Positions 1-42,432 of a stretch of DNA of 55,525 nt are shown piece by piece. How positions within the stretch are numbered: the first letter of the stretch is position 1; every line of letters starts with the position of its first letter. The stretch spans positions 20,464 through 75,988 of the forward strand of contig MQRK01233039.1 of the NCBI GenBank assembly GCA_001938485.1, in the 5' to 3' direction. The position numbers were made by a program, and so were the translations under genes. Source of the stretch: Girardia tigrina. Lineage: Eukaryota. Under the pieces are notes generated by a model, which worked only from the letters and a program-made list of their open reading frames with translations, did not search any database and was not told the DNA's origin.

Positions 1-1520
1 GCTTTTTGTGTTTGTACTGTTTGGATTTAATGTTTTGCAAATATACGATTTTGTACGTCACTCTTAGTTTTACTTTAAGGTATTTTTTAATATATTGGTG
101 CTTTTTAGTTAAGGCGGCAGCTGGGATCTTGCCTCGGCGGCAAAACACCTTGAGCCGGCACTGTTTCCATTCATCTATTGACAAAATCCTGGCATTTTCT
201 TTTGTGTTCTCTTCTTCAATTGTTCCCACTAAACATCGTCCAAGTTTGTCCTCAAAAGTTTCTTTCTTTATAAATTTCCGTACTTTATCATTTACTCTTG
301 CTTCACTTATCTCAACATTCCTTTCATCGTCTATCACTACNNNNNNNNNNNNNNNNNNNNNNNNNNNNNNNTAAATACCAATACTTTGGGAGTCACTGGT
401 ATCCTTTAATTTATTGCCCCGACTGGCTCCACTTCTGTCGAGGCGTTGCCTTTTGGGTGTTCACTTCCTGTAACCGATTCTTCATATTCTTTTTCAATGT
501 TATTCACGAATCTCCGATTATCTCCTAGTCTTTTGTCTTCTCTATCTCTACATCTTTGTTGATTGTAGCCCGATCCTCGATAGTTATTGTCCCCTGTATT
601 TTGCTATCTTCTTCTGCCATTAAGGTTTGTATAACATTCACTTTCACTGTACCCTTTATCTTGACATCTTTTGCATTCGATGTTTGGACAGTTTCTTCTT
701 ACGTGTCCCTGTTGTCCACAACCATAACATTTTATTGGTCTCCTTTCCGAACAAGTTCTCATCATGTGTCCTTCTTTTCCACGTCCGAAACACTTGATTG
801 GTTTTCTTTGTCTACATGTTTCACTTGTGTGACCTACTTTTTCACAATTTCTACACTTGACGGCTTTCATGCCTCGAGCGTATTCTGTAGTATTTCTAGC
901 AACCCCTGTCTGATTTGTCCGTATATACTGTCCCCTGTTACTGCTTCTCTGTAACTCCGGGGTCTGTTTTGCATCCCCTGGTCTCTTACTACATTTACGT
1001 CTTCTGTCACACTTTTGACGTCATGTTCTGCCTTTATCTTTTCTTTTATCTCATCTATTCCTTTTTGTTAAGTCTCTCTTCCTTTTTTATATCCACATCA
1101 TCACAACAATGTAACAATAATGCTTCCATGATAGCCTCTTTTGACAAGTCATGTTTCAAGATCTTGGCTGCGAGCTTTTCTTCTTTTAAAAAAATACTTC
1201 CGGTGTGTCTTCCTTCATCCTGTACCGGCATACCTCAGTCAGGTCTTCGAATAGTGAAGACGTTCGAGAGAATGCCTTTCTCAATCGGTCTTTGTAACCT
1301 ACCATTATCTTATCTACCACTTTGTATCGCTCTTTCAGATCTCTCTCCAATAAACAAATGACTATTGTCTCTTGTTTGGCCTTCGCTATTTCTGCAAAAT
1401 TAAAGAATGTTTCACATTCTTCAACAAATGTCTCCACATTATCACCTTTCCTATATATATTCTTTATTCATGATATATTCTTTAAATACTTCACAAATTT
1501 CAACTGATTTGCCGACATTT
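1..1520 (-). mobile_element. Ty3/Gypsy-type LTR retrotransposon 5' part: frameshifted gag with zinc knuckles
   Basis: ATG at 1471; ORF 604-870 has four CX2CX4HX4C-type knuckles (two degenerate); N-terminus resembles the gag at 19153-20082; element runs off the left edge. Confidence 0.8.
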
Positions 1521-2437: not shown

Positions 2438-2933
2438 TGATATTAAGACATTTAGACTAGTCGCGTTTGAACTTTTATTAGAATCACATTTAGAGTCATT
2501 ATGACTCTCAGAAAGTCTTTCGTCCTTTGTCATCATACTAATTGGTTTTCTTTTTCTCTATTTAATCATGATTATTCGAACAATTTTTCTAAGTCATTTT
2601 TTAAAATATAATAATTAATATTAATTAAAAATAATAAATTTTACCATTTGTCAATAAATCCCAAAATAATAAAAATGTCATCAAATTATTTAAAATACAT
2701 TTCATTTAAATTTTACCAAAACATTAAACTTAATTTTAATTGTTAAATTAAAAATATGAACTTATAAAATGATTATTTTAATTATGTTCGAATAGTCAAT
2801 CACTTTAAATTTATATAAAAAAATACCAATTTCCATCTGGGTGGGAGAATCACCATTCTTAATTTAACATACTTAAATCAACATACAGCATCACTACATT
2901 TACACATTCAAACAATTTAAAATATTCCTCACA
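2438..2933 (-). mobile_element. Solo LTR (same family as LTRs at 5658 and 6424)
   Basis: Reverse complement matches 5658-6135 and 6424-6955 along its length (e.g. ttccatctgggtgggagaatcaccatt); begins TGTGAG on the minus strand. Confidence 0.8.
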
Positions 2934-3521
2934 ATTGAAAAGTACAGTGTAATCCTTATAATAAACCATTTTTAAAAATAGATTATAACTGAAGAGAATA
3001 CTTAAAAAACGTCAATCCTACTTGTAATAGTCTACTGACTACTACGCGTATATATATATTTTTTATGTAAATACTGTTATTTTTTGTATAATGTCTGCTA
3101 TGTTTTTTTGGTCTTCTTGTATTTCATATTATTTCTGTGTGATGCCTTGTATGTGTCTAGTGTTAATCTCTGTGTTTTATTTTTTTTATTTTTTATGCAA
3201 ATCCGAAGTGATGAAAACAAACAATTTTTTGCAATCCTCAAGATTTTTGCAGTATGGTTGTCCATGCCGTCGTTGGCTCATGTTTTTTTACCGCATTGAT
3301 CGGTTTTTGAACAAAACAAATGTGACTGACAATTGGTAGTAATCCAATTACCAACAGTAATATAACCACAATATTATTTTATGATAATATTGTTACCAAC
3401 ATTAATTTTGATTTTAAAATTCAAATCTTGAATTTTAAATCAATTATAATTAAATAATTGTAATAATAAATTTACTGATAATTGCGATTTCTTTCAACGA
3501 CAATTACAGAATTGACTATAT

Positions 3522-4421: not shown

Positions 4422-4743
4422 GTATGGAGATTAGATACTATTGTCAGTATGCTCTACCATGGAATGCCAATGTCCAGTACAGACACAAATATAATCGTTC
4501 ATACTTGTGATCAAGAACTTTGTGTTCGACCACAACATCTTAGATTCAGGGCCAGTGCTGTCGCCCTTGCTGTGGTATTAAAAGCTCTTCAACAAGGGGG
4601 ATATCAGTTGATTCCTCCGAAAAAGAATTTAAAAGAGAAAGATAATGAAAAACTGGAATCTGGAGATCCTGAAAATGGATTGGAACCAAACAGTAACAGA
4701 TCAGGCTCTGCCAGCTCGAGTATTAGTGTTACTCAAAATCAAG
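4422..4743 (+). CDS. NFI: NFI/CTF-like transcription factor, exon A (C-terminal half of MH1-type DNA-binding domain); gene 5'-partial
   Basis: Polypyrimidine acceptor ttttttccag| at 4421 and donor G|gtatt at 4744. Translation VWRLDTIVSMLYHGMPMSSTD..HTCDQELCVRPQHL aligns in register with recalled NFI consensus [29 protein letters not shown]. Confidence 0.88.
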
Positions 4744-13899: not shown

Positions 13900-14840
13900 A
13901 ATACTGTATGCACTGTGGACTTACTTACTGTACTTTACGATGCATTCTTGAAGAAGTCCATTATTTTCGTTTGTTTTGTCGCCTTTGTCATCTCTATCAA
14001 CACTTCTTCATTGAGATTCGAAAATGCACGTAAGTGAGAATCAGTAAATCTTGAAGGAGTTAGTAAGAATCGTTCCACTACTTGCAAAGCTTACATTGTT
14101 TCCTTGAACTTAAGAACAACAAGAACATCAGAATCATCAATTTCATCTTCCTAGACCACGTCTAAGATCTCTGTTGTTTTTGAAGAAATGTCATGGTTTG
14201 ATTTCCACTGGTTTATCCAATTTGTGTCTATTTCTACGTCTCCACTTATTTCTCCCAGAGTCTTGGCAAATGTCGTTTCTTTTTGTCTAAGAATTTCTCC
14301 ACTCAGTTGGCTGTTCTGTTCGCATGATTGTGAACCATTCTACCAAAGCTTTGGATGTCTGCTCAAATTTCGTTGATTTTATTCGTTTAATATTTCCAGT
14401 GATGCATTTCTCACTGCAGAGACATTTAATTTTTTCTTGGCCTTTCAAAATATCACAAAGTGTTTGCGTTTTGACATCAAAATGCTTCGTGATATCAGTT
14501 TGCTTTAAGGCCTTGTTTTGCTCTGCAAAATAGACGAATTTATACTTGCATTCTAAGCGAATTTCTGTTTGTGCTCGCTTCTTGGCCATAGCTAAAAAAT
14601 AAATAACTAAATAATTAATAAATTAAATAATCAATATCTTTTAATATCTTTTTTATGATAATAATATTTACTACTGAACAGAACTTAAATTTTTTATTTC
14701 ATTTTAACCATAGATATTCGTGCTTAATTTCACGTTCAACAATATTAAATATACGGATAAGGTTTACAAAATATAGACTTGGTTTAGAAAAATCTTCCGG
14801 ATTTCACGAATATCCGGATTAGGCAAATTTGACTTTATGT
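13900..14840 (-). mobile_element. Tigger/pogo-like transposon remnant (N-terminal HTH + CENP-B-type HTH)
   Basis: ORF 14287-14589 (KRAQTEIRLECK..KQTDITKHFDVKTQTLCDILK..KRIKSTKFEQTSKALVEWF); acidic C-terminal remnant near 14050-14200; ends uncertain. Confidence 0.7.
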
Positions 14841-14927
14841 ATATATATATATTATCTAGAATTAATAATGGCATTTTTAATAAAAATGCAAACAAAGGTC
14901 ATTTTTGATTATTAACTTTATTGACAA

Positions 14928-14964
14928 TACAGACGCGTTTCACCATCTCGGCATCTTCAGTGCA
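14928..14964 (-). ncRNA. Minimal type I hammerhead ribozyme (PLE-associated), best-preserved copy
   Basis: Minus strand UGCA-CUGAAGA-U-GCC GAGAU GGU-GAAA-CGC GUC^UGUA: complete core, stems I and II, palindromic ACGCGU at stem III, GUC cleavage triplet. Confidence 0.88.
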
Positions 14965-15043
14965 ATGAAATAAAGTGATTAATTACTATTTATATAGTTG
15001 AAAACTATTACATCATACGTCTCAAAAACATGCTTTTTGTCAT

Positions 15044-15080
15044 TGCACTGAAGATGCCGAAATGGTGAAACGCGTATGTA
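15044..15080 (+). ncRNA. Minimal type I hammerhead ribozyme
   Basis: UGCA-CUGAAGA-U-GCC GAAAU GGU-GAAA-CGC GUA^UGUA. Confidence 0.85.
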
Positions 15081-15123
15081 TTGTCAATAAATTTAATAAT
15101 CAATAATGGCCTTTGTTTGCATT

Positions 15124-15230
15124 ATATATATATATATATATATNNNNNNNNNNNNNNNNNNNNNNNNNNNNNNNNNNNNNNNNNNNNNNNNNNTATATAT
15201 ATATATATATATGTGTGTAAGTGTGTGTGT
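15124..15230. repeat. (TA)n/(TG)n microsatellite with gap; other (TA)n at 15893-16002 and 50629-50665
   Basis: Direct reading. Confidence 0.9.
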
Positions 15231-15887
15231 GTACTCAGACTTCAAAAAATACCGAATTAATCTATTATCCAAATGTACAAAATGAGAAGGAAGTTTAAAT
15301 TAGATGTTTGAAAAAAACTTAAATCTCTTTGATAAAATTTAAATCTCCTTAATAAAGTATTTTTCTTTTTATATTTTCATTTTAATGTCATTAATATTCA
15401 TAATTTTAGAACTCTTTTATAGCTTTTGATTAAAATTAAAAGAAACTTTATATTTTTGATTTGACAAACAACAATTGTATATTTCTATTCAGATAAAGCA
15501 ATAATAATATTTATACTAATTATACGGAGAAAGAATTACCTTAGAAGATTCGGTAAAATAATGAAAATTGTAATTTATTTATACAGAAATAACTTAAAAT
15601 AATATTTAAATATTTGGTGCATTTACATCAAATTGTTTATTATACGGATCTAAAATTCCTAAATAAATTAACCTTTGAAACTCTTCTATGAAATAAAATA
15701 TAATATAAATATATATTTAAAAAGATAAATAAACATTTGATATAGCATAACCATTATCCGCTTTATACATAAAGTTATGTTTATAAAATTACAAAAATTC
15801 TTATTTAATAAAATAGAAACTTTAAAATTTAGTAAAGTAGTCAGTAAAGATATTATGGTTAAATTAACAAAAAATATCTAGAATATA

Positions 15888-15921
<34 letters not shown>

Positions 15922-16005
15922 NNNNNNNNNNNNNNNNNNNNNNNNNNNNNNNNNNNNNNNNNNNNNNNNNNNNNNNNNNNNNNATATATATATATATATA
16001 TATTA

Positions 16006-17545
16006 TAGAACTGATAATGGCATTTTTAATAATAATGAAAAGAAAGGCCATTTTTGAATATTAAATTTATTCACAATACGTACGCGTTTCACCATTTCGG
16101 TATCTTCAGTGCAATGAAATAAAGAGATTAATTACTATTTATATAGTTGAAAAACTATTACATCATACGTCTCAAAAACATGCTTTTTTTTCTCCTTATT
16201 TTTTTAAAGTATTTTAATGATATTTAAAAAACTTTAATATGATTAGATGAATCACCTTGCACGTTTAAGCATGGTTTATGATGCTTTATTAACAATGTTT
16301 CGGCAATAATCCTTTCATAATTTGTGTCAAAATTATTTAAAATCACTTTAAAATCTTTATTCTAATCTATAAGATTACCTTTACATCTTTTAATATGGCT
16401 CAATATCGAACTATTTCTACTCGAATGAGTATGTTCAGCAATTCTAGTGCGGATATGACGACTTGTCTCTCCAATGTACAAGGCTTCGCACTTGTGACAT
16501 TTGAATTGATAAACTAGATTTGTCTGCACAAAGGAGTTTTTGATTTGTTGGAAAAATAGTTCCGGCATTTATTAGTTAAAAAGATTACTCTCAATTTTAA
16601 GCCAACAGGTGTTCGATGTTCTAAAAATCGTTTGAACTCCTTTGCTCCCTCTGAGTACGGTAATTTTAGATTGATAGTCATTTGATTATAAATGCCATTT
16701 CCCGAAGTTATATTTGATGTATTATTTGATTTTAAATAAATGGATTCAACAGTATCTTTTATGATTTTATTTAAATACTTTTTATTAAATCCATTTTAGA
16801 AAGCCTATTATGAAGTTCATCAACTTCATTATCAAATATCTCAAAGGTTGATGTTAAACCCCAGACTCTATGTACCAAACCTTTAATTATGTTCCTATTG
16901 TATTTTGGGTCAGAAAAACTGTTTGGACAACTGTACAAACCGGTATCAGTTGGTTTTCGATATAATCGAGTCTGATATTTATCTTTAATGCTTTCAATTA
17001 ATACATCTAAAAATGATAGTTTATTAGTATTTCAAAGGTAAACTTGATATTATGGTGAAGACCATTTACATACTCTAAAAAGCGTGAGACATTATCTTCA
17101 CCTTTCAATATAAGAAAAGTGTTATCAACATATCTCGTATAAAATAAAGGTAATTTTCCATTAAAATTATTGAACTTTTGTTCTAAATTATGCAAAAAGA
17201 GGCAATCAAAGGCGTTAAAGGTGAACCCATAGCGATTCCATCAGTTTGCATAAACCATTTTTCATTAAAAATAAATGGTACGTTTTTAGTACTGAATTCC
17301 AATAATTCTCTTAATGCTTTACTACTCAATGACTTAGTTTTATCTTCTACCAAATTATCCCATAATTTAACTCATAAATTAATGGTTTCTCATTCATTAA
17401 GATTTTAAAGTGATTTTAAATAATTTTGATACAAATTATGAAAGGATTATTGCCGAAGCATTGTTAATAAAGCATCATAAACCATGCTTAAACGTGCAAG
17501 GTGATTCATCTAATCATATTAAAGTTTTTTAAATATCATAAAAGA
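16006..17545 (-). mobile_element. Penelope-like element (RT + GIY-YIG endonuclease), 5'-truncated, with inverted 5' repeat
   Basis: RT motifs QTDGIAMGSPL, RYVDNTF, YRKPTDTGLY; EN motif VYQFKCHKCEALYIGETSRHIRTRIAEH; ~17397-17545 is the inverted copy of ~16210-16355; stops and frameshifts present. Confidence 0.93.
16077..16113 (-). ncRNA. Minimal type I hammerhead ribozyme (stem I mismatch)
   Basis: UGCA-CUGAAGA-U-ACC GAAAU GGU-GAAA-CGC GUA^CGUA; A-C mismatch at the first stem I pair. Confidence 0.78.
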
Positions 17546-19152
17546 CTTTTTTTAAAGAAAAAAAATTTCATTCCAGTAATATTTTCCGTAGCGTTCTCTC
17601 GTCTTGGTGAGTAACTGCATTCAGGCTAATATATTGGCTAAATTGATCAATTATAGCCAAAATATACTGATATCCATTAACATTTCTGTTGAATGGTCCA
17701 CAAAAGTCAATATATATCTTTTGAAAAGGTTCATCTGCAAATTACTTAATATGTCTTTCTTTTGTTTTCGCAGTTAGTGTTTTTCGCTTTTGACAATTTA
17801 TGCAACTTTGAACAACTTCTTTTATCTTTTCTCTCATATTTTCCATATCAAAATCATCTCTGAGGTAGTTAAAAACCTTTTTACTCGCAGCATGACATAA
17901 CATCTTATGCATATCTTCAATATAATCGGTTCTATTTGTTCTCGGGATCCAGTACTTATTATTTTCCGTTGCTACAATGTCATCTTTCAGTTTCCATTTA
18001 TTTGTTCTTCCTTGTTTCAAATCGTTTTTGATTTTTTTCGATTTCTTCATTGTCATTCTGCCATTTGAAATTATTTGGTTCTTCGTGTAACGCTAGAATT
18101 CGAGTTTTAATCTTTCCTTTCTTCGCTTCTTCATGTGTTGTTTGGCATTGACTACATAATNNNNNNNNNNNNNNNNNNNNNNNNNNNNCATTTGAATGTC
18201 TTTCACCTTTCCTGTATTCCATTCTCATATCAAGACCGCTGAGAAAATTTATCCATGTTTGAAATTGCGGTGTTATTGGGTTCTTTGTGGTCATCATAAA
18301 CGTAATAGCTTTGTGGAATGTTCGCAACAAGAATCTTTTCCCATATAAGAAATGCTTAAAATGCTGAGTGAAATAATATATCGCTAGTAATAATTCTTTT
18401 CTGGTAATGCAATAACCAAGTTCATGTTTATTCATCTTATGAGAACCATATGCTATGACTCTTTCTCTTCCACTCGAGTCTTTTTGTGACAGTACTGCTC
18501 CAATCGTATCNNNNNNNNNNNNNNNNNNNNNNNNNNNNNNNNNNNNNNNNNNNNNNNNNNNNNNNNNNNNNNNNNNNNNNNNNNNNNNNNNNNNNNNNNN
18601 NNNAGCTTCGTCACATTCTTTTGTCCATATTATTTTCTTATCCTTGTTTTTGCCACACAGGCCTTCTAAAACTTTCGAATATCTTGCATAATCTTTTATG
18701 AATTTTCTGTAATAATTTGTCAAACCCAAGAAATTCCTTAAATGTTTAATATATTTGAACATTTTGAAATTTGTTAATCGCATCGATCTTTGTTTTATCA
18801 GTTTCTATACCATTACCACTTATTACGTACCCCAAAAACTTGGTCTTTTCTACTAGAAATTGACATTTCTCTGGATTTATCCTCAAACCTGATTCTTTGA
18901 TTTTTTTAAATTTCTTCATTCTTCGTTTTGCTTCTTTTTTCTTCCATTTTACTACTAAAACAGTTTCCTTCACATTCTTTCCAACAATCTAATTTTCAAT
19001 CACACACACATTCACATACACAATCACACACACCATCATACTTATTTTTATCACTTAATGAAGCACATTGATCACCTCTCCTTGTGATCGTGCCTCCTCG
19101 TTTCCCTGCTCATTTTCACACCTTTGTCTCTTATCTTGGAAGACCCTTTTAG

Positions 19153-20082
19153 TTAACTTTCCTTGATTTGATCTAGTCTCTTTGTATTCGCTGTCGTCAT
19201 TGCATTCATCAATTTCCGCAACTGGGTATTGACGATTTTGAGGTCTATTATTGTATCCTGCATTATTTTTTTCTTCCAATCGCTGTTTCTACTGTACTGT
19301 TCTCTTTCCTTAAATATATTCTTGTTGAGATAACATTGAGTTCTATAATGGCCATTTCTGTTGCAGTGAGTACACTTCACATTTGGACAATCTCTTCTTA
19401 TGTGGCCTTCTTCTTCACATGCATAACATTTTACGGTTCTGTAATAATTGTTTTTCGGTTTGAATCCATTATTTCCTTTGTTCCTATTGTTGTGTTCGTA
19501 ATGCCTATGCGGGGTTCTTTCGTTATGTACAGCTTTGCGTCTAGTTACGGTTTTCCAATTATCTTGTTTATTTACCGTCGTATATGCTGCCACTGTTTCC
19601 TCACTTTCCATTTTACGTAGTTCGTACATATTGGTAACTACGCTTTTTATATCTTTGGTTTCAGTTGTTCCTCTCAGTTTTAATTCTTTTTTGATTTCAT
19701 AACTGTCAACCATATTTAAACGGGCAAGGTTGAGTAGTTCTTTTTTAGACAATTTTTCTTTGGTTAGTATATTCACAAGTTCTTCTGCTTTTTTGTATGT
19801 TTCTTGTGGGTTGGAGGATCCCCACCGTAAGTTTACCAACTCATTCATTGTATCCAGAATGGATTTTTCTTTAGTAAATGCAGCCTTCAATTTTTCTTTG
19901 TAATTTTTACCGTCCATCTCTGAATATTTTTTTATTGCCGACGGTGTCATAAACACAGTCACCATCACTATTTTCCTCTCTTCTGCTATACCCATAATGT
20001 CGGAATAGCGTTCGAAATTATCAATGAAATCTTCCAAATTCGATTCTGATCCATTGAATTTTTCACATCCCATAATGTTCAT
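19153..20082 (-). CDS. gag: Gypsy gag (open frame, two CCHC knuckles)
   Basis: Part of ORF 19153-20184; the true start is probably downstream of the PBS at about 20082 (MNIMG...). Confidence 0.8.
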   Translation of the reverse strand: MNIMGCEKFNGSESNLEDFIDNFERYSDIMGIAEERKIVMVTVFMTPSAIKKYSEMDGKNYKEKLKAAFTKEKSILDTMNELVNLRWGSSNPQETYKKAEELVNILTKEKLSKKELLNLARLNMVDSYEIKKELKLRGTTETKDIKSVVTNMYELRKMESEETVAAYTTVNKQDNWKTVTRRKAVHNERTPHRHYEHNNRNKGNNGFKPKNNYYRTVKCYACEEEGHIRRDCPNVKCTHCNRNGHYRTQCYLNKNIFKEREQYSRNSDWKKKIMQDTIIDLKIVNTQLRKLMNAMTTANTKRLDQIKES

Positions 20083-20091
20083 TGTCACATG

Positions 20092-20105
20092 AGCCGTGGT
20101 CGCCA
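20092..20105 (-). promoter_or_regulatory. Putative primer binding site (TGGCGACCACGGCT)
   Basis: TGG-initial GC-rich motif at the junction of AT-rich LTR-like sequence and gag. Confidence 0.65.
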
Positions 20106-20594
20106 TATTAACAGCATCACAATTTGAATGCAAACATTTATTGACAACACAAACACTTTCTTCACAACAATTTTCATTGGTCATCTTTCTTTGATTGATA
20201 TAGTTTTTTTTGTTAATATATTCAAATCTAAAAAAACAACGAATGGGAAAGATTAATAATAAATTTTAATTTCTCATAATTTTTATTGGATAAAAGTCAT
20301 TACATAATTTTTTAAATAAAAATTAATTTTTAAAATATGTTTTTATATCTTTGGTTTCAGTTGTTCCTCTCAGTTTTAATTCTTAATAAGTTAAAATCAT
20401 TTACTGAAAATATTATTAAAATTCATAATTATCAAACTTTAATTAATTAGTACTTAAATTTAATATCATTAAATTAATTTCATTAGATTCAAATAATCGA
20501 TCAATAAACATATCAATCCCATCTGATTAGGAGAGTCACAAATCTAAACAGCATACAAACAACAAACTGACAACATTCCAAATTATCCTTCACA

Positions 20595-20630
20595 GCACTG
20601 AAGATGCCGAAATGGTGAAACTCATATGTA
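20595..20630 (+). ncRNA. Degenerate hammerhead ribozyme copy
   Basis: GCA-CUGAAGA-U-GCC GAAAU GGU-GAAA-CUC AUA^UGUA; core intact but stem III palindrome mutated. Confidence 0.65.
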
Positions 20631-20674
20631 TTGTGAATAAATTTAATATTCAAAAATGGCCTTTGTTTGCATTA

Positions 20675-23461: not shown

Positions 23462-23530
23462 ATGAAGTTGAAAATTCTGTCGAAATATCCGGACCTTTTA
23501 ACATCGAACAAATCCAGCAGTATTTAATAG
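23462..23530 (+). CDS. NFI: NFI-like gene, exon B
   Basis: tttag| acceptor, phase 1 matches exon A. Reads (D)EVENSVEISGPFNIEQIQQYLI, resembling the conserved NFI post-DBD motif DSFVTSGVF/WxVTELVRV. Donor G|gtttt at 23531. Confidence 0.78.
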
Positions 23531-23575: not shown

Positions 23576-23876
23576 AAGACTTAAAACCATGTGTTCAGTC
23601 TCTTGAAAAAATGGTTTTAAGTGCAACAGACCGGTCAATTTTATGTGCACATCCTGATCTTGACAACATCAATAGTTCAACTGCCATTTCTGCCACTTAC
23701 GATTCTCCAAGAACAATTGTGAATGATAGTTCTTCTCAGTATAAAGCATTCCACTTTGATAAGTCAAATAATTCAAGACCAATGAAAAGATTAAACAATC
23801 ATTTGGCACCCGACTGTAAGTCACCGAATTCCATAAAACGAGGTCGAATGTTAGATCGTAAAGCAGGAAGTAAAAG
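23576..23876 (+). CDS. NFI: NFI-like gene, exon C
   Basis: tgtag| acceptor after a 45-nt intron; phase 1 puts it in frame with ORF 23611-23901; donor AG|gttatt at 23877 (phase 2). Confidence 0.78.
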
Positions 23877-30956: not shown

Positions 30957-32037
30957 TCCTCCTCTTTTGATGTCTGATATCACTCCAGTTACAAGTGGGT
31001 ATCTAAAGAATGCATCGGTTCCCATTCCAACAATGAATAGTAAATCGAACTCCGGTAATATCAATCCCCATCTCAATGGTTGTAATCTCAATGGGATTAA
31101 CAGATCTGATCATCACCCTATTACAAATTCATTTCCAAATTTTTATCATAATCACCCACCAAATCATAATCCGTCCAACCACCATCCCTCAATGAGTTTA
31201 TGTTCCCCAAATCCTAATCCTAGATATATGTATCAGACTCTTGCAAATCATAAATCTAATCCATTTCATCATAATCTTCATTATCCATTTATTCCGGGAA
31301 CTGGATCGCATACCTTTCCTCCTCTTTTTCCATCTTCTTCATATATTCCTGATCCCGGAAACACTATGAAACATCATCACAGATTCTCTCCCCTTCCTTC
31401 ACCCCGTCACGGTTCAATGGAACATTTACCATTATCTTTAACGCCAACAAAATACACCCGACATGGTCATAATTCTAATGTTATACACCCTGTTTCTGTG
31501 CCATATTATCCATCATCTCAAACTCCATCGATCTTTCCATTTCGACATAATCCATTCGAATCAATGCCTCCCCTTGGATTCTCTAGATTTCAATCTCCGA
31601 AAAAACCTCATTTTAACAATATTCATCGACCCATTCCAGAACCTGCTACGACATGTACAATTCCAAAAATTGGAAATTCTAATTTACAACAATCATTTGA
31701 AGATGATTCCTCAATAATTGAAGATAATAATCCTAATGAATCATTTACCAAACGATCTACCGAAATAGAAAAAAATCCATCCCCGATAGAAGAGGATAGC
31801 GCGAATGCTTCTTCCTCAATACCTGAAAATAGTAATACAAGTACAACAACAACATCAAGTAAGAGTAACAACGTTACTCCATCTCAAACTCCCAGAAAGC
31901 CTGCTAAAAAGAGACTTGAGGCTAGAACTCCTACATTTGATAAAAACGAAGAAAATCAAGGAGATTCCTCATTAGATTTTTCAGCTTCTACAGGATCCGC
32001 ATTTAGACTTGTTCATAAAAGCAAATCAATAAGTTAG
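30957..32037 (+). CDS. NFI: NFI-like gene, exon D (Pro/His/Ser/Asn-rich putative regulatory domain; probably terminal)
   Basis: tttcag| acceptor at 30956; phase 2 joins exon C in frame with the 356-aa ORF. Proline-rich as expected for a CTF/NFI C-terminal region; basic PRKPAKKRL NLS-like motif; TAG at 32035-32037 (overlaps a possible GTTAGT donor). Confidence 0.8.
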
Positions 32038-41199: not shown

Positions 41200-42432
41200 C
41201 TTATGATTTTTAAGTCAAAAAATTTTCGTCTGAATATATTGTGATTAATTTCGACGGATCAACCGTCATCATCAGACTGAATTAACAATGATATACTCGC
41301 GTTTATATATCAAAGCAATGTTTATGTAATCATTATGTCATTTAAATCATNNNNNNNNNNNNNNNNNNNNNNNNNNNNNNNNNNNNNNNNNNNNNNNNNN
41401 NNNNNNNNNNNNNNNNNNNNNNNNNNNNNNNNNNNNNNNNNNNNNNNNNNNNNNNNNNNNNNNNNNNNNNNNNNNNNNNNNNNNNNNNNNNNNNNNNNNN
41501 NNNNNNNNNNNNNNNNNNNNNNNNNNNNNNNNNNNNNNNNNNNNNNNNNNNNNNNNNNNNNNNNNNNNNNNNNNNNNNNNNNNNNNNNNNNNNNNNNNNN
41601 NNNNNNNNNNNNNNNNNNNNNNNNNNNNNNNNNNNNNNNNNNNNNNNNNNNNNNNNNNNNNNNNNNNNNNNNNNNNNNNNNNNNNNNNNNNNNNNNNNNN
41701 NNNNNNNNNNNNNNNNNNNNNNNNNNNNNNNNNNNNNNNNNNNNNNNNNNNNNNNNNNNNNNNNNNNNNNNNNNNNNNNNNNNNNNNNNNNNNNNNNNNN
41801 NNNNNNNNNNNNNNNNNNNNNNNNNNNNNNNNCGATTTGGAATATCCATTTTTATGAAGTAAATTCATTAACTTATCAATACTTTCATTACATTTAGCGT
41901 ACGTAGACGAAAGTGTCCAAGATCTATAGATCAAATCTTTTATCATATTTCCTTTATATTTAGGTTCACAAAAACTGTTAGGGGTTGTATATAACCCTGT
42001 ATCAGTTTTCTTTCTATAGATCCCAGTTTCAAAATGGTTGTTTTTTGCTCTTTCTATCAAAAGATCTAAGAATGGTAANNNNNNNNNNTTTTCATATTCT
42101 ACCGTGAATTTTATATTTGAATGTAGGGAATTCATATAATTTAAGAAAGGCTCAACTTGTTCTTTATTATCAAACAATAGAAAAATATCATCTACATAAC
42201 GTTTATAAATTTTTAGATTTAACACCATCATATAGACTTATTTTCTCTTCAATCTTTGAAAGAAATATCGAAGCTAAAGTTGGAGCTAATGGAGAACCCA
42301 TAGCTACCCCATCAACCTGTTGATACCAATCATTATTAAATAAAAATCGTAAATTCGATGTTGCAAAATATAACAATTCCCGAAAAGCAATCTCATCAAC
42401 TAAATGATGTTCATTAACATTATTTCTCCATA
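41200..42432 (-). mobile_element. Second Penelope-like element (RT; probable EN region hidden by N gap)
   Basis: QVDGVAMGSPLAPTLASIFLS, RYVDDIF, LPFLDLLI, IYRKKTDTGLY; hammerhead-containing 3' repeat near 41240-41280. Confidence 0.9.
41241..41277 (-). ncRNA. Minimal hammerhead ribozyme of the second PLE family
   Basis: GU-CUGAUGA-U-GACGG UUGAU CCGUC-GAAA-UUA AUC^AC: 5-bp stem II, palindromic AUUAAU; stem I only 2 bp adjacent to the core. Confidence 0.75.

What the first reader, a model, noticed from the sequence alone, without database searches (positions are those of the whole stretch)
4422..4600. NFI-like DNA-binding domain with His-Cys box endonuclease spacing, including the His at the catalytic position
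Seen: VWRLD..L..G.P..STD (NFI signature) is followed by H-T-C-D-Q-E-L-C-V-R-P-Q-H-L. Known (recalled): MH1 domains of Smad/NFI are proposed to derive from His-Me finger homing endonucleases such as I-PpoI, whose H98-x-C100-x4-C105-x4-H110 spacing is reproduced exactly here. Vertebrate NFI instead has C-x5-C, a longer linker and no His at that position. The metal-binding Asn (I-PpoI N119, +21) is replaced by Ala. Inference: a strongly divergent NFI that retains or reconverged on the ancestral nuclease-like loop, probably catalytically dead; a possible intermediate or new NFI subfamily.
Basis: partly seen in the sequence, partly recalled or inferred. Interest (0 to 1): 0.8.

Follow-up and report, generated by a model that had tools for sequence, protein, structure and literature searches.

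The report
Flatworm NFI with nuclease-like zinc loop

Summary
Window 4422-4743 (+) is a spliced exon encoding VWRLD...STD...H-T-C-x4-C-x4-H-L, with Ala 21 residues after the His.

It is the C-terminal half of an NFI-type (MH1-like) DNA-binding domain. The upstream half lies outside the window: one exon is 10.5 kb upstream and the first exon is probably on another contig.

The gene is one of three paralogues, and they are the only NFI genes in this 1.4 Gb genome. Orthologues occur across flatworms (Schistosoma, Echinococcus, Cichlidogyrus, Macrostomum) and some are already auto-annotated as CTF/NF-I.

- The His is invariant in 12/12 flatworm sequences. It replaces a Lys that is invariant in 12/12 canonical NFIs.
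- The C-x4-C spacing is not new. A sponge NFI and two unnamed sponge-like NFIs have it.
- The residue at the nuclease Mg-binding position is Ala or Ser in 10/12 flatworm sequences. It is Asp in canonical NFI and Asn in I-PpoI and HNH_3.
- An AlphaFold model of a close orthologue matches NFIC at Z 20.7 and I-PpoI only at Z 2.8.

Verdict: a divergent but ordinary NFI transcription factor. Its vestigial His-Me finger loop most likely re-acquired the His and is not catalytic. It is a neat evolutionary curiosity, not an intermediate form.

The parts
4422..4743 (+). Exon encoding the C-terminal half of the NFI-type DNA-binding domain (helix VWRLD.., STD backbone-contact motif, strand, zinc loop, strand, hydrophobic helix), followed by a low-complexity linker
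   Evidence: AG acceptor before 4422 and GT donor after 4743. Translation. Human NFI DBDs are the only significant PDB hits: E 2e-4 with the single exon and 4e-9 with the family profile. The exon is 81-88% identical to flatworm orthologues.
4500..4541 (+). His-Cys-box-like zinc loop H27-T-C29-DQEL-C34-VRPQ-H39-L40. Cys29, Cys34 and His39 correspond to the NFIX zinc ligands Cys156, Cys162 and His167. His27 replaces the invariant Lys152.
   Evidence: Alignment A2. Column counts. NFIX zinc ligands from PMC12630593. Pfam PF05551 matches this stretch in 12/12 flatworm sequences, all below the cut-off. hhalign puts H/C/C/H in register with HNH_3.
4563..4565 (+). Ala48, 21 residues after His27. This is the position of the Mg-binding Asn119 of I-PpoI and of the invariant Asn of HNH_3. 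Canonical NFIs have an invariant Asp here.
   Evidence: In the AF2 model of the orthologue the position falls in the first turn of the helix that follows the second strand.
23462..23530 (+). Next coding exon (..SGPFNIEQIQQY.., a motif conserved in flatworm orthologues), after an 18.7 kb intron
   Evidence: tblastn with P0009-P0014 and P0178. AG acceptor and GT donor read. The reading frame continues from the single carried base at 4743.
23576..23876 (+). Following exon (..EDLKPCVQSLEKM..SATDR..). The 3' end is approximate.
   Evidence: tblastn. Splice sites read. No transcript was available to fix the donor.
30967..32037 (+). Open frame holding a large downstream exon with the conserved basic motif TPRKPAKKRLEARTP at 31888-31932. 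Exon borders were not determined.
   Evidence: the ORF listing. tblastn to five flatworm orthologues. Sequence read.

Best explanation
The exon belongs to a flatworm orthologue of Nuclear Factor I, a sequence-specific transcription factor with an MH1-like, zinc-stabilised DNA-binding domain. Shown: the fold, the CCCH zinc ligands and the base-reading Arg and Lys are conserved. Three of the four zinc ligands lie in this exon. The fourth Cys and the base-reading RRID..DK hairpin lie in the exon 10.5 kb upstream. Inferred: the protein binds TGGC-type half-sites through the beta-hairpin and probably dimerises through the hydrophobic helix after the loop. The H-x-C-x4-C-x4-H loop is the vestigial beta-beta-alpha-Me (His-Me finger) core that every MH1/NFI domain inherited from a homing-endonuclease-like ancestor. 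In flatworms the Lys that closes the first strand in all other NFIs sampled has become His, which recreates the exact His-Cys box signature. The helix residue that would hold the catalytic metal is Ala or Ser in 10 of 12 flatworm sequences, and the residue before the His is hydrophobic. The site is therefore most likely structural or a DNA-backbone contact, not catalytic.
For: NFI identity:
- Human NFI DBDs are the only significant PDB sequence hits.
- The upstream exon reads ..CVLSRGDARGRMRRIDGGKGSDK| against NFI ..[23 protein letters not shown]|.
- The AF2 model of the orthologue P0178 (96% and 94% identical to the two DBD exons of paralogue B, 77% to the window exon; pLDDT 81) matches NFIC at Z 20.7 (170 residues, rmsd 2.5), Foldseek E 6e-11, TM 0.80-0.86. 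Smad MH1 gives Z 10.6 and everything else is 4.1 or lower.
- hhalign of the flatworm against the canonical C-terminal half gives probability 98.7%, E 3e-16.

Orthology:
- The genome has no canonical NFI. PF10524, PF00859 and a canonical NFI query find only these three paralogues.
- The family spans trematodes, cestodes, monogeneans and Macrostomum. Macrostomum is sister to the rest, as in the species tree.

DNA contacts:
- The equivalents of NFIX Arg116, Lys125, Arg115, Thr145, Arg38 and Lys42 are kept as the same or a basic residue (with for the NFIX and NFIA contacts).

Loop:
- His27 is found in 12/12 flatworm sequences and Lys in 12/12 canonical ones.
- In the model the His is the last residue of strand 158-160. 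The loop, strand 173-175 and helix 179-191 follow.
- Position +21 is Ala 8, Ser 2, Met 1, Asn 1 in flatworms, Asp 12/12 in canonical NFI and Asn 16/16 in HNH_3.
Against: No biochemistry exists for any flatworm NFI, so DNA binding, specificity and absence of cleavage are all inferred. The structure was predicted for an orthologue of paralogue B, not for the window's own spliced protein. The first exon of this gene is assigned to another contig only by elimination. Expression of this paralogue was not shown. The invariance of the His over a very deep divergence shows it is under selection for some function that I cannot name. One family member of unknown taxon (P0016) has Asn at +21 as well as the His.
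Confidence: 0.85

Rival explanations
1. The His is plesiomorphic. On this view the flatworm family is a relic or 'intermediate' lineage that kept the catalytic-position His from the homing-endonuclease ancestor, while all other NFIs changed it to Lys.
For: The loop length and the C-x4-C-x4-H spacing are the same as in I-PpoI and HNH_3, and also as in sponge-type NFIs, so the spacing itself looks ancestral. In the unrooted DBD tree the flatworm group is one side of a very long, fully supported branch, so a root on that branch is not excluded by the tree alone. All 12 flatworm C-terminal halves hit Pfam zf-His_Me_endon, and none of the 12 canonical ones does.
Against: Flatworms are bilaterians. 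A sponge, vertebrates, a hagfish and seven unnamed invertebrate-type NFIs all have Lys. Each genome has one family or the other, not both (single NFI genes in Porifera, Placozoa, Cnidaria, C. elegans and Drosophila according to PMC11193209). Retention would need an ancient duplication and many independent losses, or many parallel His-to-Lys changes. The long branch is typical of fast-evolving flatworm genes.
Confidence: 0.08
2. The domain is, or is also, an active His-Me finger nuclease or nickase. His27 would act as general base and some other residue would hold the metal.
For: The His is at the correct position and is invariant. The profile search with this exon family retrieves bacterial and phage HNH_3 endonucleases, E 5e-8 to 1e-3. 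hhalign against HNH_3 units gives probability 97.4%. One relative, P0016, has Asn at +21.
Against: The +21 metal ligand is Ala or Ser in 10/12 sequences, including all three paralogues here. The residue before the His is Val, Ile, Met or Tyr, so it cannot be a ligand. The Asp after the first Cys, conserved in HNH_3, is variable here. The hhalign match stops at the second strand and does not cover the GT..N helix. The HNH_3 set was itself picked by the flatworm profile, so that score is biased upward. Pfam scores stay below the cut-off (17.7 bits for the window exon against a 27-bit cut-off). I-PpoI is not found by sequence in the PDB and only at a noise-level Z of 2.8 by structure. MH1 domains are classed as inactive His-Me fingers (PMC5714182).
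Confidence: 0.03
3. The exon is a decaying pseudo-exon or an assembly artefact and is not part of a working gene.
For: Expression of this paralogue was not demonstrated. The first exon is not on this contig.
Against: The frame is open and the splice sites are canonical. A related species carries a copy that is 88% identical at the protein level through the exon, including the fast-evolving tail (P0001). Downstream exons with motifs conserved among flatworm orthologues follow in order and in frame. The sister paralogue has a full-length, intron-free, transcript-like contig in a close relative (P0178, 893 aa on 2910 nt).
Confidence: 0.02

Closest known systems
[quoted passage not shown]
   Same: The fold is the same: Z 20.7 and TM 0.80-0.86 for the orthologue model. 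The CCCH zinc site is kept. The RRID..DK beta-hairpin keeps Arg116 and Lys125. The VWRLD helix, the STD motif and the N-terminal helix plus basic 'antenna' are all present.
   Different: Only about 25% identical over the DBD. His replaces the invariant Lys152. The loop is C-x4-C rather than C-x5-C, and three residues shorter overall. The redox-sensitive Cys119 is Gly. The invariant Asp in ..KELD.. is Ala. There is no CTF_NFI C-terminal domain by Pfam. The proteins are 650-1500 aa long. The DBD is split by introns, including one at DK|VW. The sequences fall below the Pfam MH1 and NfI_DNAbd_pre-N cut-offs.
Flatworm NFI orthologues in public databases (S. mansoni Smp_152430, Echinococcus granulosus 'Nuclear factor 1 A type' A0A068WT72, Cichlidogyrus, Echinostoma and Macrostomum 'CTF/NF-I domain-containing protein')
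   Same: The same family: 68-85% identical in this exon for the neodermatan orthologues and about 46% for Macrostomum. The H-x-C-x4-C-x4-H loop is identical, as are the RIDGGKGSDK hairpin and the downstream motifs (GPF.IE.LQQY, PRQPAKKR.EARTP).
   Different: This genome carries three paralogues: A in the window, B at 84% identity and C at 60%. I found no paper describing the family or its loop.
Sponge-type NFI (Sycon ciliatum P0041; unnamed P0028 and P0032)
   Same: The same loop length and x-C-x4-C-x4-H spacing as the flatworm family, so the 'I-PpoI spacing' is not a flatworm invention.
   Different: These have Lys, not His, before the loop and Asp, not Ala, at +21. They pass the Pfam MH1 cut-off, and P0041 and P0028 also pass NfI_DNAbd_pre-N.
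His-Cys box / HNH_3 His-Me finger endonucleases (I-PpoI 1A73; Pfam PF05551, PF13392)
   Same: H-x-C-x4-C-x4-H-L in register, with Pro two residues before the last His. The His ends a beta-strand, and a strand and helix follow. A first zinc Cys comes from an upstream segment.
   Different: There is no metal-binding Asn at +21. The helix is hydrophobic rather than GT..(D/E)N. The rest of the domain is NFI. The structural match is only Z 2.8 (I-PpoI) and 2.5 (I-HmuI). Pfam scores are below the cut-off.
Smad MH1 domain
   Same: The same superfold and CCCH zinc site, and the same origin as a degraded His-Me finger (Z 10.6).
   Different: No antenna domain, a different hairpin, and C-x11-C spacing (from my own knowledge of Smad3). 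The Smad genes of this genome lie on other contigs.

Membership tests
NFI (CTF/NF-I) DNA-binding domain | CCCH zinc site (NFIX Cys103, Cys156, Cys162, His167) | tested here: met
   Cys in ..SCVLSRGD.. of the upstream exon (L020:4093-4305), plus Cys29, Cys34 and His39 of the window exon, align with the four ligands. They are invariant in the family.
NFI (CTF/NF-I) DNA-binding domain | Beta-hairpin with base-reading Arg116 and Lys125 (..RRID....DK|VWRLD) | tested here: met
   RMRRIDGGKGSDK in the upstream exon. Arg115, Arg116, Asp124 and Lys125 are kept, Arg121 is Lys and Ala123 is Ser.
NFI (CTF/NF-I) DNA-binding domain | MH1-like core plus N-terminal helix and antenna, with NFI as the best structural match | tested here: met
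   The model of orthologue P0178:125-335 matches NFIC at Z 20.7, aligned over model 6..187 and chain 11..183. For the window gene itself the N-terminal exon is only assigned by elimination to C241454:57341-57520(-).
NFI (CTF/NF-I) DNA-binding domain | Reaches the curated Pfam cut-offs (MH1 PF03165, NfI_DNAbd_pre-N PF10524) | tested here: not met
   The exon and the full-length flatworm proteins fall below the cut-offs. The best is MH1 at 13 bits in P0014. UniRef names based on another profile do call them CTF/NF-I.
NFI (CTF/NF-I) DNA-binding domain | CTF_NFI C-terminal region (PF00859) | tested here: not met
   No hit in the genome or in the full-length orthologues. The C-terminal regions are long and low in complexity, with their own conserved motifs.
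NFI (CTF/NF-I) DNA-binding domain | Dimeric binding to TTGGC(N5)GCCAA | not testable with these tools
   Inferred only, from the conserved contact residues.
His-Me finger (His-Cys box / HNH_3) endonuclease | Catalytic His at the end of the first strand of the beta-beta-alpha motif | tested here: met
   His27 is the last residue of strand 158-160 in the model. It aligns with the invariant His of HNH_3, which in turn aligns with I-PpoI His98. No residue-level superposition was possible.
His-Me finger (His-Cys box / HNH_3) endonuclease | Metal-binding Asn, His or Asp in the helix (I-PpoI Asn119, His+21) | tested here: not met
   Ala48 in the window. The family has Ala 8, Ser 2, Met 1 and Asn 1. 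HNH_3 has Asn in 16/16.
His-Me finger (His-Cys box / HNH_3) endonuclease | Reaches the Pfam cut-off for PF05551 or PF13392 | tested here: not met
   PF05551 scores 16.8-17.7 bits for the window exon against a 27-bit cut-off; the best family E-value is 1.5e-4. HNH_3 is hit by 1 of 12 members at E 0.17.
His-Me finger (His-Cys box / HNH_3) endonuclease | Phosphodiester cleavage | not testable with these tools
   Needs a nuclease assay.

The most novel reading that the evidence does not exclude
Flatworm NFIs have rebuilt a working feature on the fossil nuclease site. The invariant His at the old catalytic position could give a pH-, metal- or redox-sensitive DNA-backbone contact. In members that also carry Asn at +21, such as P0016, it could even give residual nicking activity. 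That would make this a transcription factor reverting toward its endonuclease ancestry.
Probability: 0.05. Interest if true: 0.7.

Novelty: new member of a known kind. Interest (0 to 1): 0.35.

Why it matters
The idea that MH1 and NFI domains are degraded homing endonucleases has so far rested mainly on structure comparison. In the flatworm NFI family the kinship shows at the sequence level. The Pfam model of the homing-endonuclease zinc loop picks up all 12 flatworm sequences and none of 12 canonical NFIs, and a profile of this exon retrieves bacterial HNH_3 nucleases. That makes the family a useful bridge for teaching and for remote-homology benchmarks.

It also gives a natural Lys-to-His and Asp-to-Ala double variant for asking what the vestigial active-site residues do in NFI. 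Practically, flatworm NFIs escape the Pfam cut-offs and are mostly labelled 'hypothetical', so annotation of parasite and planarian genomes could be improved. It does not change what is known about how NFI works.

Tried and rejected
- **PDB searches for I-PpoI.** A phmmer search with the 25-residue loop alone found nothing. The family profile found only NFIs, not I-PpoI.
- **Exon-only AF2 model.** The model of window 4422-4625 had pLDDT 66. That is too low, so it was not used for fold searching.
- **Naming the unnamed invertebrate NFIs.** I looked up the source contigs of P0121, P0032 and P0016. Only metagenome or run accessions came back, so the Lys/His polarity rests on few named outgroups.
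- **Sponge NFI word search.** It returned almost only vertebrates among the 120 proteins listed.
- **First exon on this contig.** It is not in the 14 kb upstream. Candidates lie on other contigs.
- **Orthologue DNA for an exon/intron conservation test.** P0001's contig came without DNA.
- **Joined protein.** Exons were handled separately, and the natural orthologue P0178 was used for the fold.
- **Earlier findings.** The two look-ups returned nothing.
- **Rejected readings.** An unrelated HNH gene or transposon domain is excluded because the flanking exons and the fold are NFI. A Smad is excluded because the Smad MH1 loci are elsewhere.

Full report
**What is at the coordinates.** The window is AT-rich (about 25% G+C). 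It lies in contig C233039 of a 1.43 Gb eukaryotic assembly of 255,254 contigs.

At 4422 an AG acceptor is followed by an open frame that reads VWRLD...SSTD...HTCDQELCVRPQHL...RASAVAL.... It runs to a GT donor after 4743, so the exon is 4422-4743, longer than the 4422-4600 given.

An HNH_3 profile aligns I-PpoI chains as H98-L-C100-x4-C105-x4-H110-L...N119, and the exon reproduces that spacing.

**What the exon belongs to.**
- Against solved structures, the only hits are the DNA-binding domains of human NFI-A, -B, -C and -X. E is 2e-4 with the single exon and about 4e-9 with a family profile.
- Comparing this contig with two paralogous contigs by tblastx revealed a conserved exon 10.5 kb upstream, at contig 14093-14305 (L020:4093-4305), outside the window. 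It encodes ..NLLKKLYKEL..CVLSRGDARGRMRRIDGGKGSDK and abuts VWRLD. It matches NFI ..[23 protein letters not shown].
- Downstream exons with motifs shared by flatworm orthologues follow at 23462-23530, at 23576 to about 23876, and inside the open frame 30967-32037.
- The exon for the N-terminal helix and basic 'antenna' (..KPSEALF..CKRLAPLWFKG..) is not on this contig. Two copies lie on other contigs. The one on C241977 is identical to the orthologue of paralogue B. By elimination the one on C241454:57341-57520(-), which ends in a GT donor, belongs to this gene. That link is an inference.

**Family and distribution.**
- The genome has three paralogues. A is in the window. B is on C219369, 84% identical in this exon. 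C is on C214896 plus three near-identical short contigs, 60% identical, with introns of roughly 50-100 nt.
- Pfam models for the NFI pre-N region and CTF_NFI, and a canonical NFI protein used as query, find nothing else in the genome. The MH1 model finds only Smad-like loci. These three genes are therefore the genome's NFI complement.
- Word and profile searches found the same family in Schistosoma mansoni (Smp_152430, 'hypothetical'), Trichobilharzia, Echinostoma, Cichlidogyrus, Protopolystoma, Echinococcus ('Nuclear factor 1 A type'), Anoplocephala, Hydatigera, Mesocestoides, Sparganum and Macrostomum. Several carry the UniRef name 'CTF/NF-I domain-containing protein'.
- P0178 is an 893-aa protein on a 2910-nt contig. 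It is nearly identical to paralogue B, whose exons here are 14.6 kb apart. It must come from a spliced transcript of a close relative, and it confirms the DK|VW junction.
- In a maximum-likelihood tree of the DBD, the flatworm sequences form one side of a fully supported, very long branch. Macrostomum is sister to the rest, as expected for vertical descent.
- From these hits the host is a flatworm. I could not name the species.

**Fold.** I folded the natural orthologue P0178:125-335, using a 29-row alignment that also held the window's exons as separate rows. Mean pLDDT was 81 and pTM 0.73.
- Foldseek ranks only NFI DBDs at the top (E 6e-11 to 1e-8, TM 0.79-0.86), then Smad MH1 from E 0.018.
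- An exhaustive alignment against 48,161 chains gives NFIC Z 20.7, Smad4 MH1 Z 10.6 and nothing else above 4.1. I-PpoI (Z 2.8) and I-HmuI (Z 2.5) appear at noise level.
- The I-PpoI alignment range (model 69..177 to chain 2..115) would put the His on His98 if that stretch is ungapped. This is only consistency, not proof.
- In the model the His is the last residue of strand 158-160. The zinc loop, strand 173-175 and helix 179-191 follow, which is the beta-beta-alpha topology. His+21 falls in the first turn of the helix.
- In the NFIX structure paper the loop 153-164 connects strands beta3 and beta4, and Cys103, Cys156, Cys162 and His167 hold the zinc. Lys152 therefore ends beta3, as the His does here.

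**The loop compared across NFIs.** Positions are counted from VWRLD.

| Position | Flatworm (12) | Canonical NFI (12) | HNH_3 units (16) | I-PpoI |
|---|---|---|---|---|
| 27 | His 12/12 | Lys 12/12 | His 16/16 | His98 |
| 29, 34, 37, 39 | Cys, Cys, Pro, His (invariant) | Cys, Cys, Pro, His (invariant) | Cys, Cys, Pro, His (invariant) | Cys100, Cys105, Pro108, His110 |
| 48 (His+21) | Ala 8, Ser 2, Met 1, Asn 1 | Asp 12/12 | Asn 16/16 | Asn119 |

The canonical set comprises the sponge Sycon, hagfish, eel, chicken and eight unnamed sequences.

The sponge-type NFIs (Sycon, P0028, P0032) have the same loop length and x-C-x4-C spacing as the flatworms. Vertebrate-type NFIs have three extra residues and C-x5-C, and one arthropod-like sequence has C-x6-C.

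So the 'I-PpoI spacing' is shared with sponge-type NFIs and is plausibly ancestral for NFI. What is specific to flatworms is Lys to His at position 27 and Asp to Ala or Ser at position 48. Neither group has both a His and an acidic or amide residue, except one sequence of unknown taxon: P0016 has His plus Asn.

**How nuclease-like it is.** A profile of this exon family, run against 1.84 billion representatives, found three groups:
- the flatworm family;
- a few canonical NFIs, all with Lys;
- bacterial or phage proteins made of tandem HNH_3 endonuclease units (E 5e-8 to 1e-3).

An unbiased contrast comes from Pfam's own models. All 12 flatworm C-terminal halves hit zinc-loop model PF05551 (best E 1.5e-4; 17.7 bits for the window exon, below the 27-bit cut-off) and none hits MH1. 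Nine of 12 canonical halves hit MH1 and none hits PF05551.

| hhalign comparison | Probability | E-value |
|---|---|---|
| Flatworm vs HNH_3 units | 97.4% | 1e-11 |
| Canonical NFI vs HNH_3 units | 86.5% | 5e-6 |
| Flatworm vs canonical NFI | 98.7% | 3e-16 |

The first value is inflated, because the flatworm profile itself selected the HNH_3 units. The match to HNH_3 ends at the second strand and does not include the GT..N helix. The family is still closest to NFI.

**Mechanism.**
- Shown: NFI fold, zinc ligands, conserved hairpin.
- Inferred: sequence-specific binding of TGGC-type half-sites. The residues that read bases or hold the backbone in NFIX and NFIA (Arg116, Lys125, Arg115, Thr145, Arg38, Lys42) are kept as the same or a basic residue. 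Ala123 is Ser and the redox-sensitive Cys119 is Gly.
- Inferred: no catalysis. The metal ligand is missing and the residue before the His is hydrophobic. The Asp after the first Cys, conserved in HNH_3, is variable here. The published classification of His-Me fingers treats MH1 as an inactive group.
- Unknown: what the invariant His does. A phosphate contact replacing Lys152, or a structural role at the mouth of the zinc loop, is the simplest guess.

**Retained or regained.** The tree cannot be rooted. Flatworms are bilaterians and lack a canonical NFI. Sponges, vertebrates and the other sampled lineages have Lys. Invertebrates generally have one NFI gene. A single Lys-to-His change at the base of the sampled flatworms (Macrostomum already has it) is far more parsimonious than retention from the nuclease ancestor.

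I put retention at about 8% and real nuclease activity at about 3%. The outgroup sample with names is small, which is the main weakness.

**Limits.**
- Expression of this paralogue is untested. Twenty runs from ten studies hold the exon or part of it, but none is on record as RNA.
Those places were not sent to any tool again.
- No residue-level superposition on I-PpoI could be made with the tools.
- I found no paper on flatworm NFI or on this loop.

**Verdict.** The 'intermediate / new subfamily' reading is not. This is a member of the divergent, already catalogued but unstudied flatworm NFI group. It carries a conserved and probably re-acquired His at the fossil catalytic position of its His-Me finger core.

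Noticed in passing
window 17998-20184 (- strand): Two long ORFs sit inside the 18.7 kb intron. One has an RT RNase H domain (E 9e-22) and one has a gag-type CCHC zinc knuckle (E 1e-7). This is a fragment of an LTR-type retroelement. It was only observed, not reconstructed.
   Followed up: partly
protein P0016 (locus L036:484-918): A 144-aa member of the flatworm-type NFI family from an unnamed sequencing run carries both the His and an Asn at His+21. That is the full H...N spacing of I-PpoI and HNH_3. It is the only such case among 12 sequences. Its taxon and completeness are unknown.
   Followed up: partly
proteins P0021-P0040: These bacterial or phage proteins are built of two to five tandem HNH_3 units. 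Often only the last unit keeps both the catalytic His and the GT..N Asn. Upstream units have Gln, Arg or Pro at the His position or lack the Asn. This is a prokaryotic parallel for nuclease-dead His-Me fingers reused as DNA-binding modules.
   Followed up: no
G000 contigs C214896:19480-20148, C66606, C128380, C128381 (L014-L017, L032): Paralogue C has its three DBD exons within about 700 bp, with introns of roughly 50-100 nt, against 10-19 kb introns in paralogues A and B. It occurs on four contigs with identical exon sequence, which may be haplotigs, recent duplicates or assembly redundancy.
   Followed up: partly
window about 14880-17560 and 20105-20673: These stretches match C214896:815-1490 and 2588-3023 in several frames and on both strands (tblastx). 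They belong to a dispersed repeat family in the introns.
   Followed up: no
window 41322-42231: Three overlapping ORFs of 175-294 aa lie on both strands. The 294-aa one was scanned against Pfam and had no match. This is probably a repeat or a compositional artefact.
   Followed up: partly
L020:4093-4305 and alignment A2: The redox-sensitive Cys-3 of NFI (NFIX Cys119, ..RIDC..) is Gly in all sampled flatworm family members (RIDGGKGSDK; RIDGLRGSDK in Macrostomum) except Cichlidogyrus, which keeps Cys (RIDCGKGSDK). Oxidative regulation described for vertebrate NFI is therefore probably absent.
   Followed up: partly
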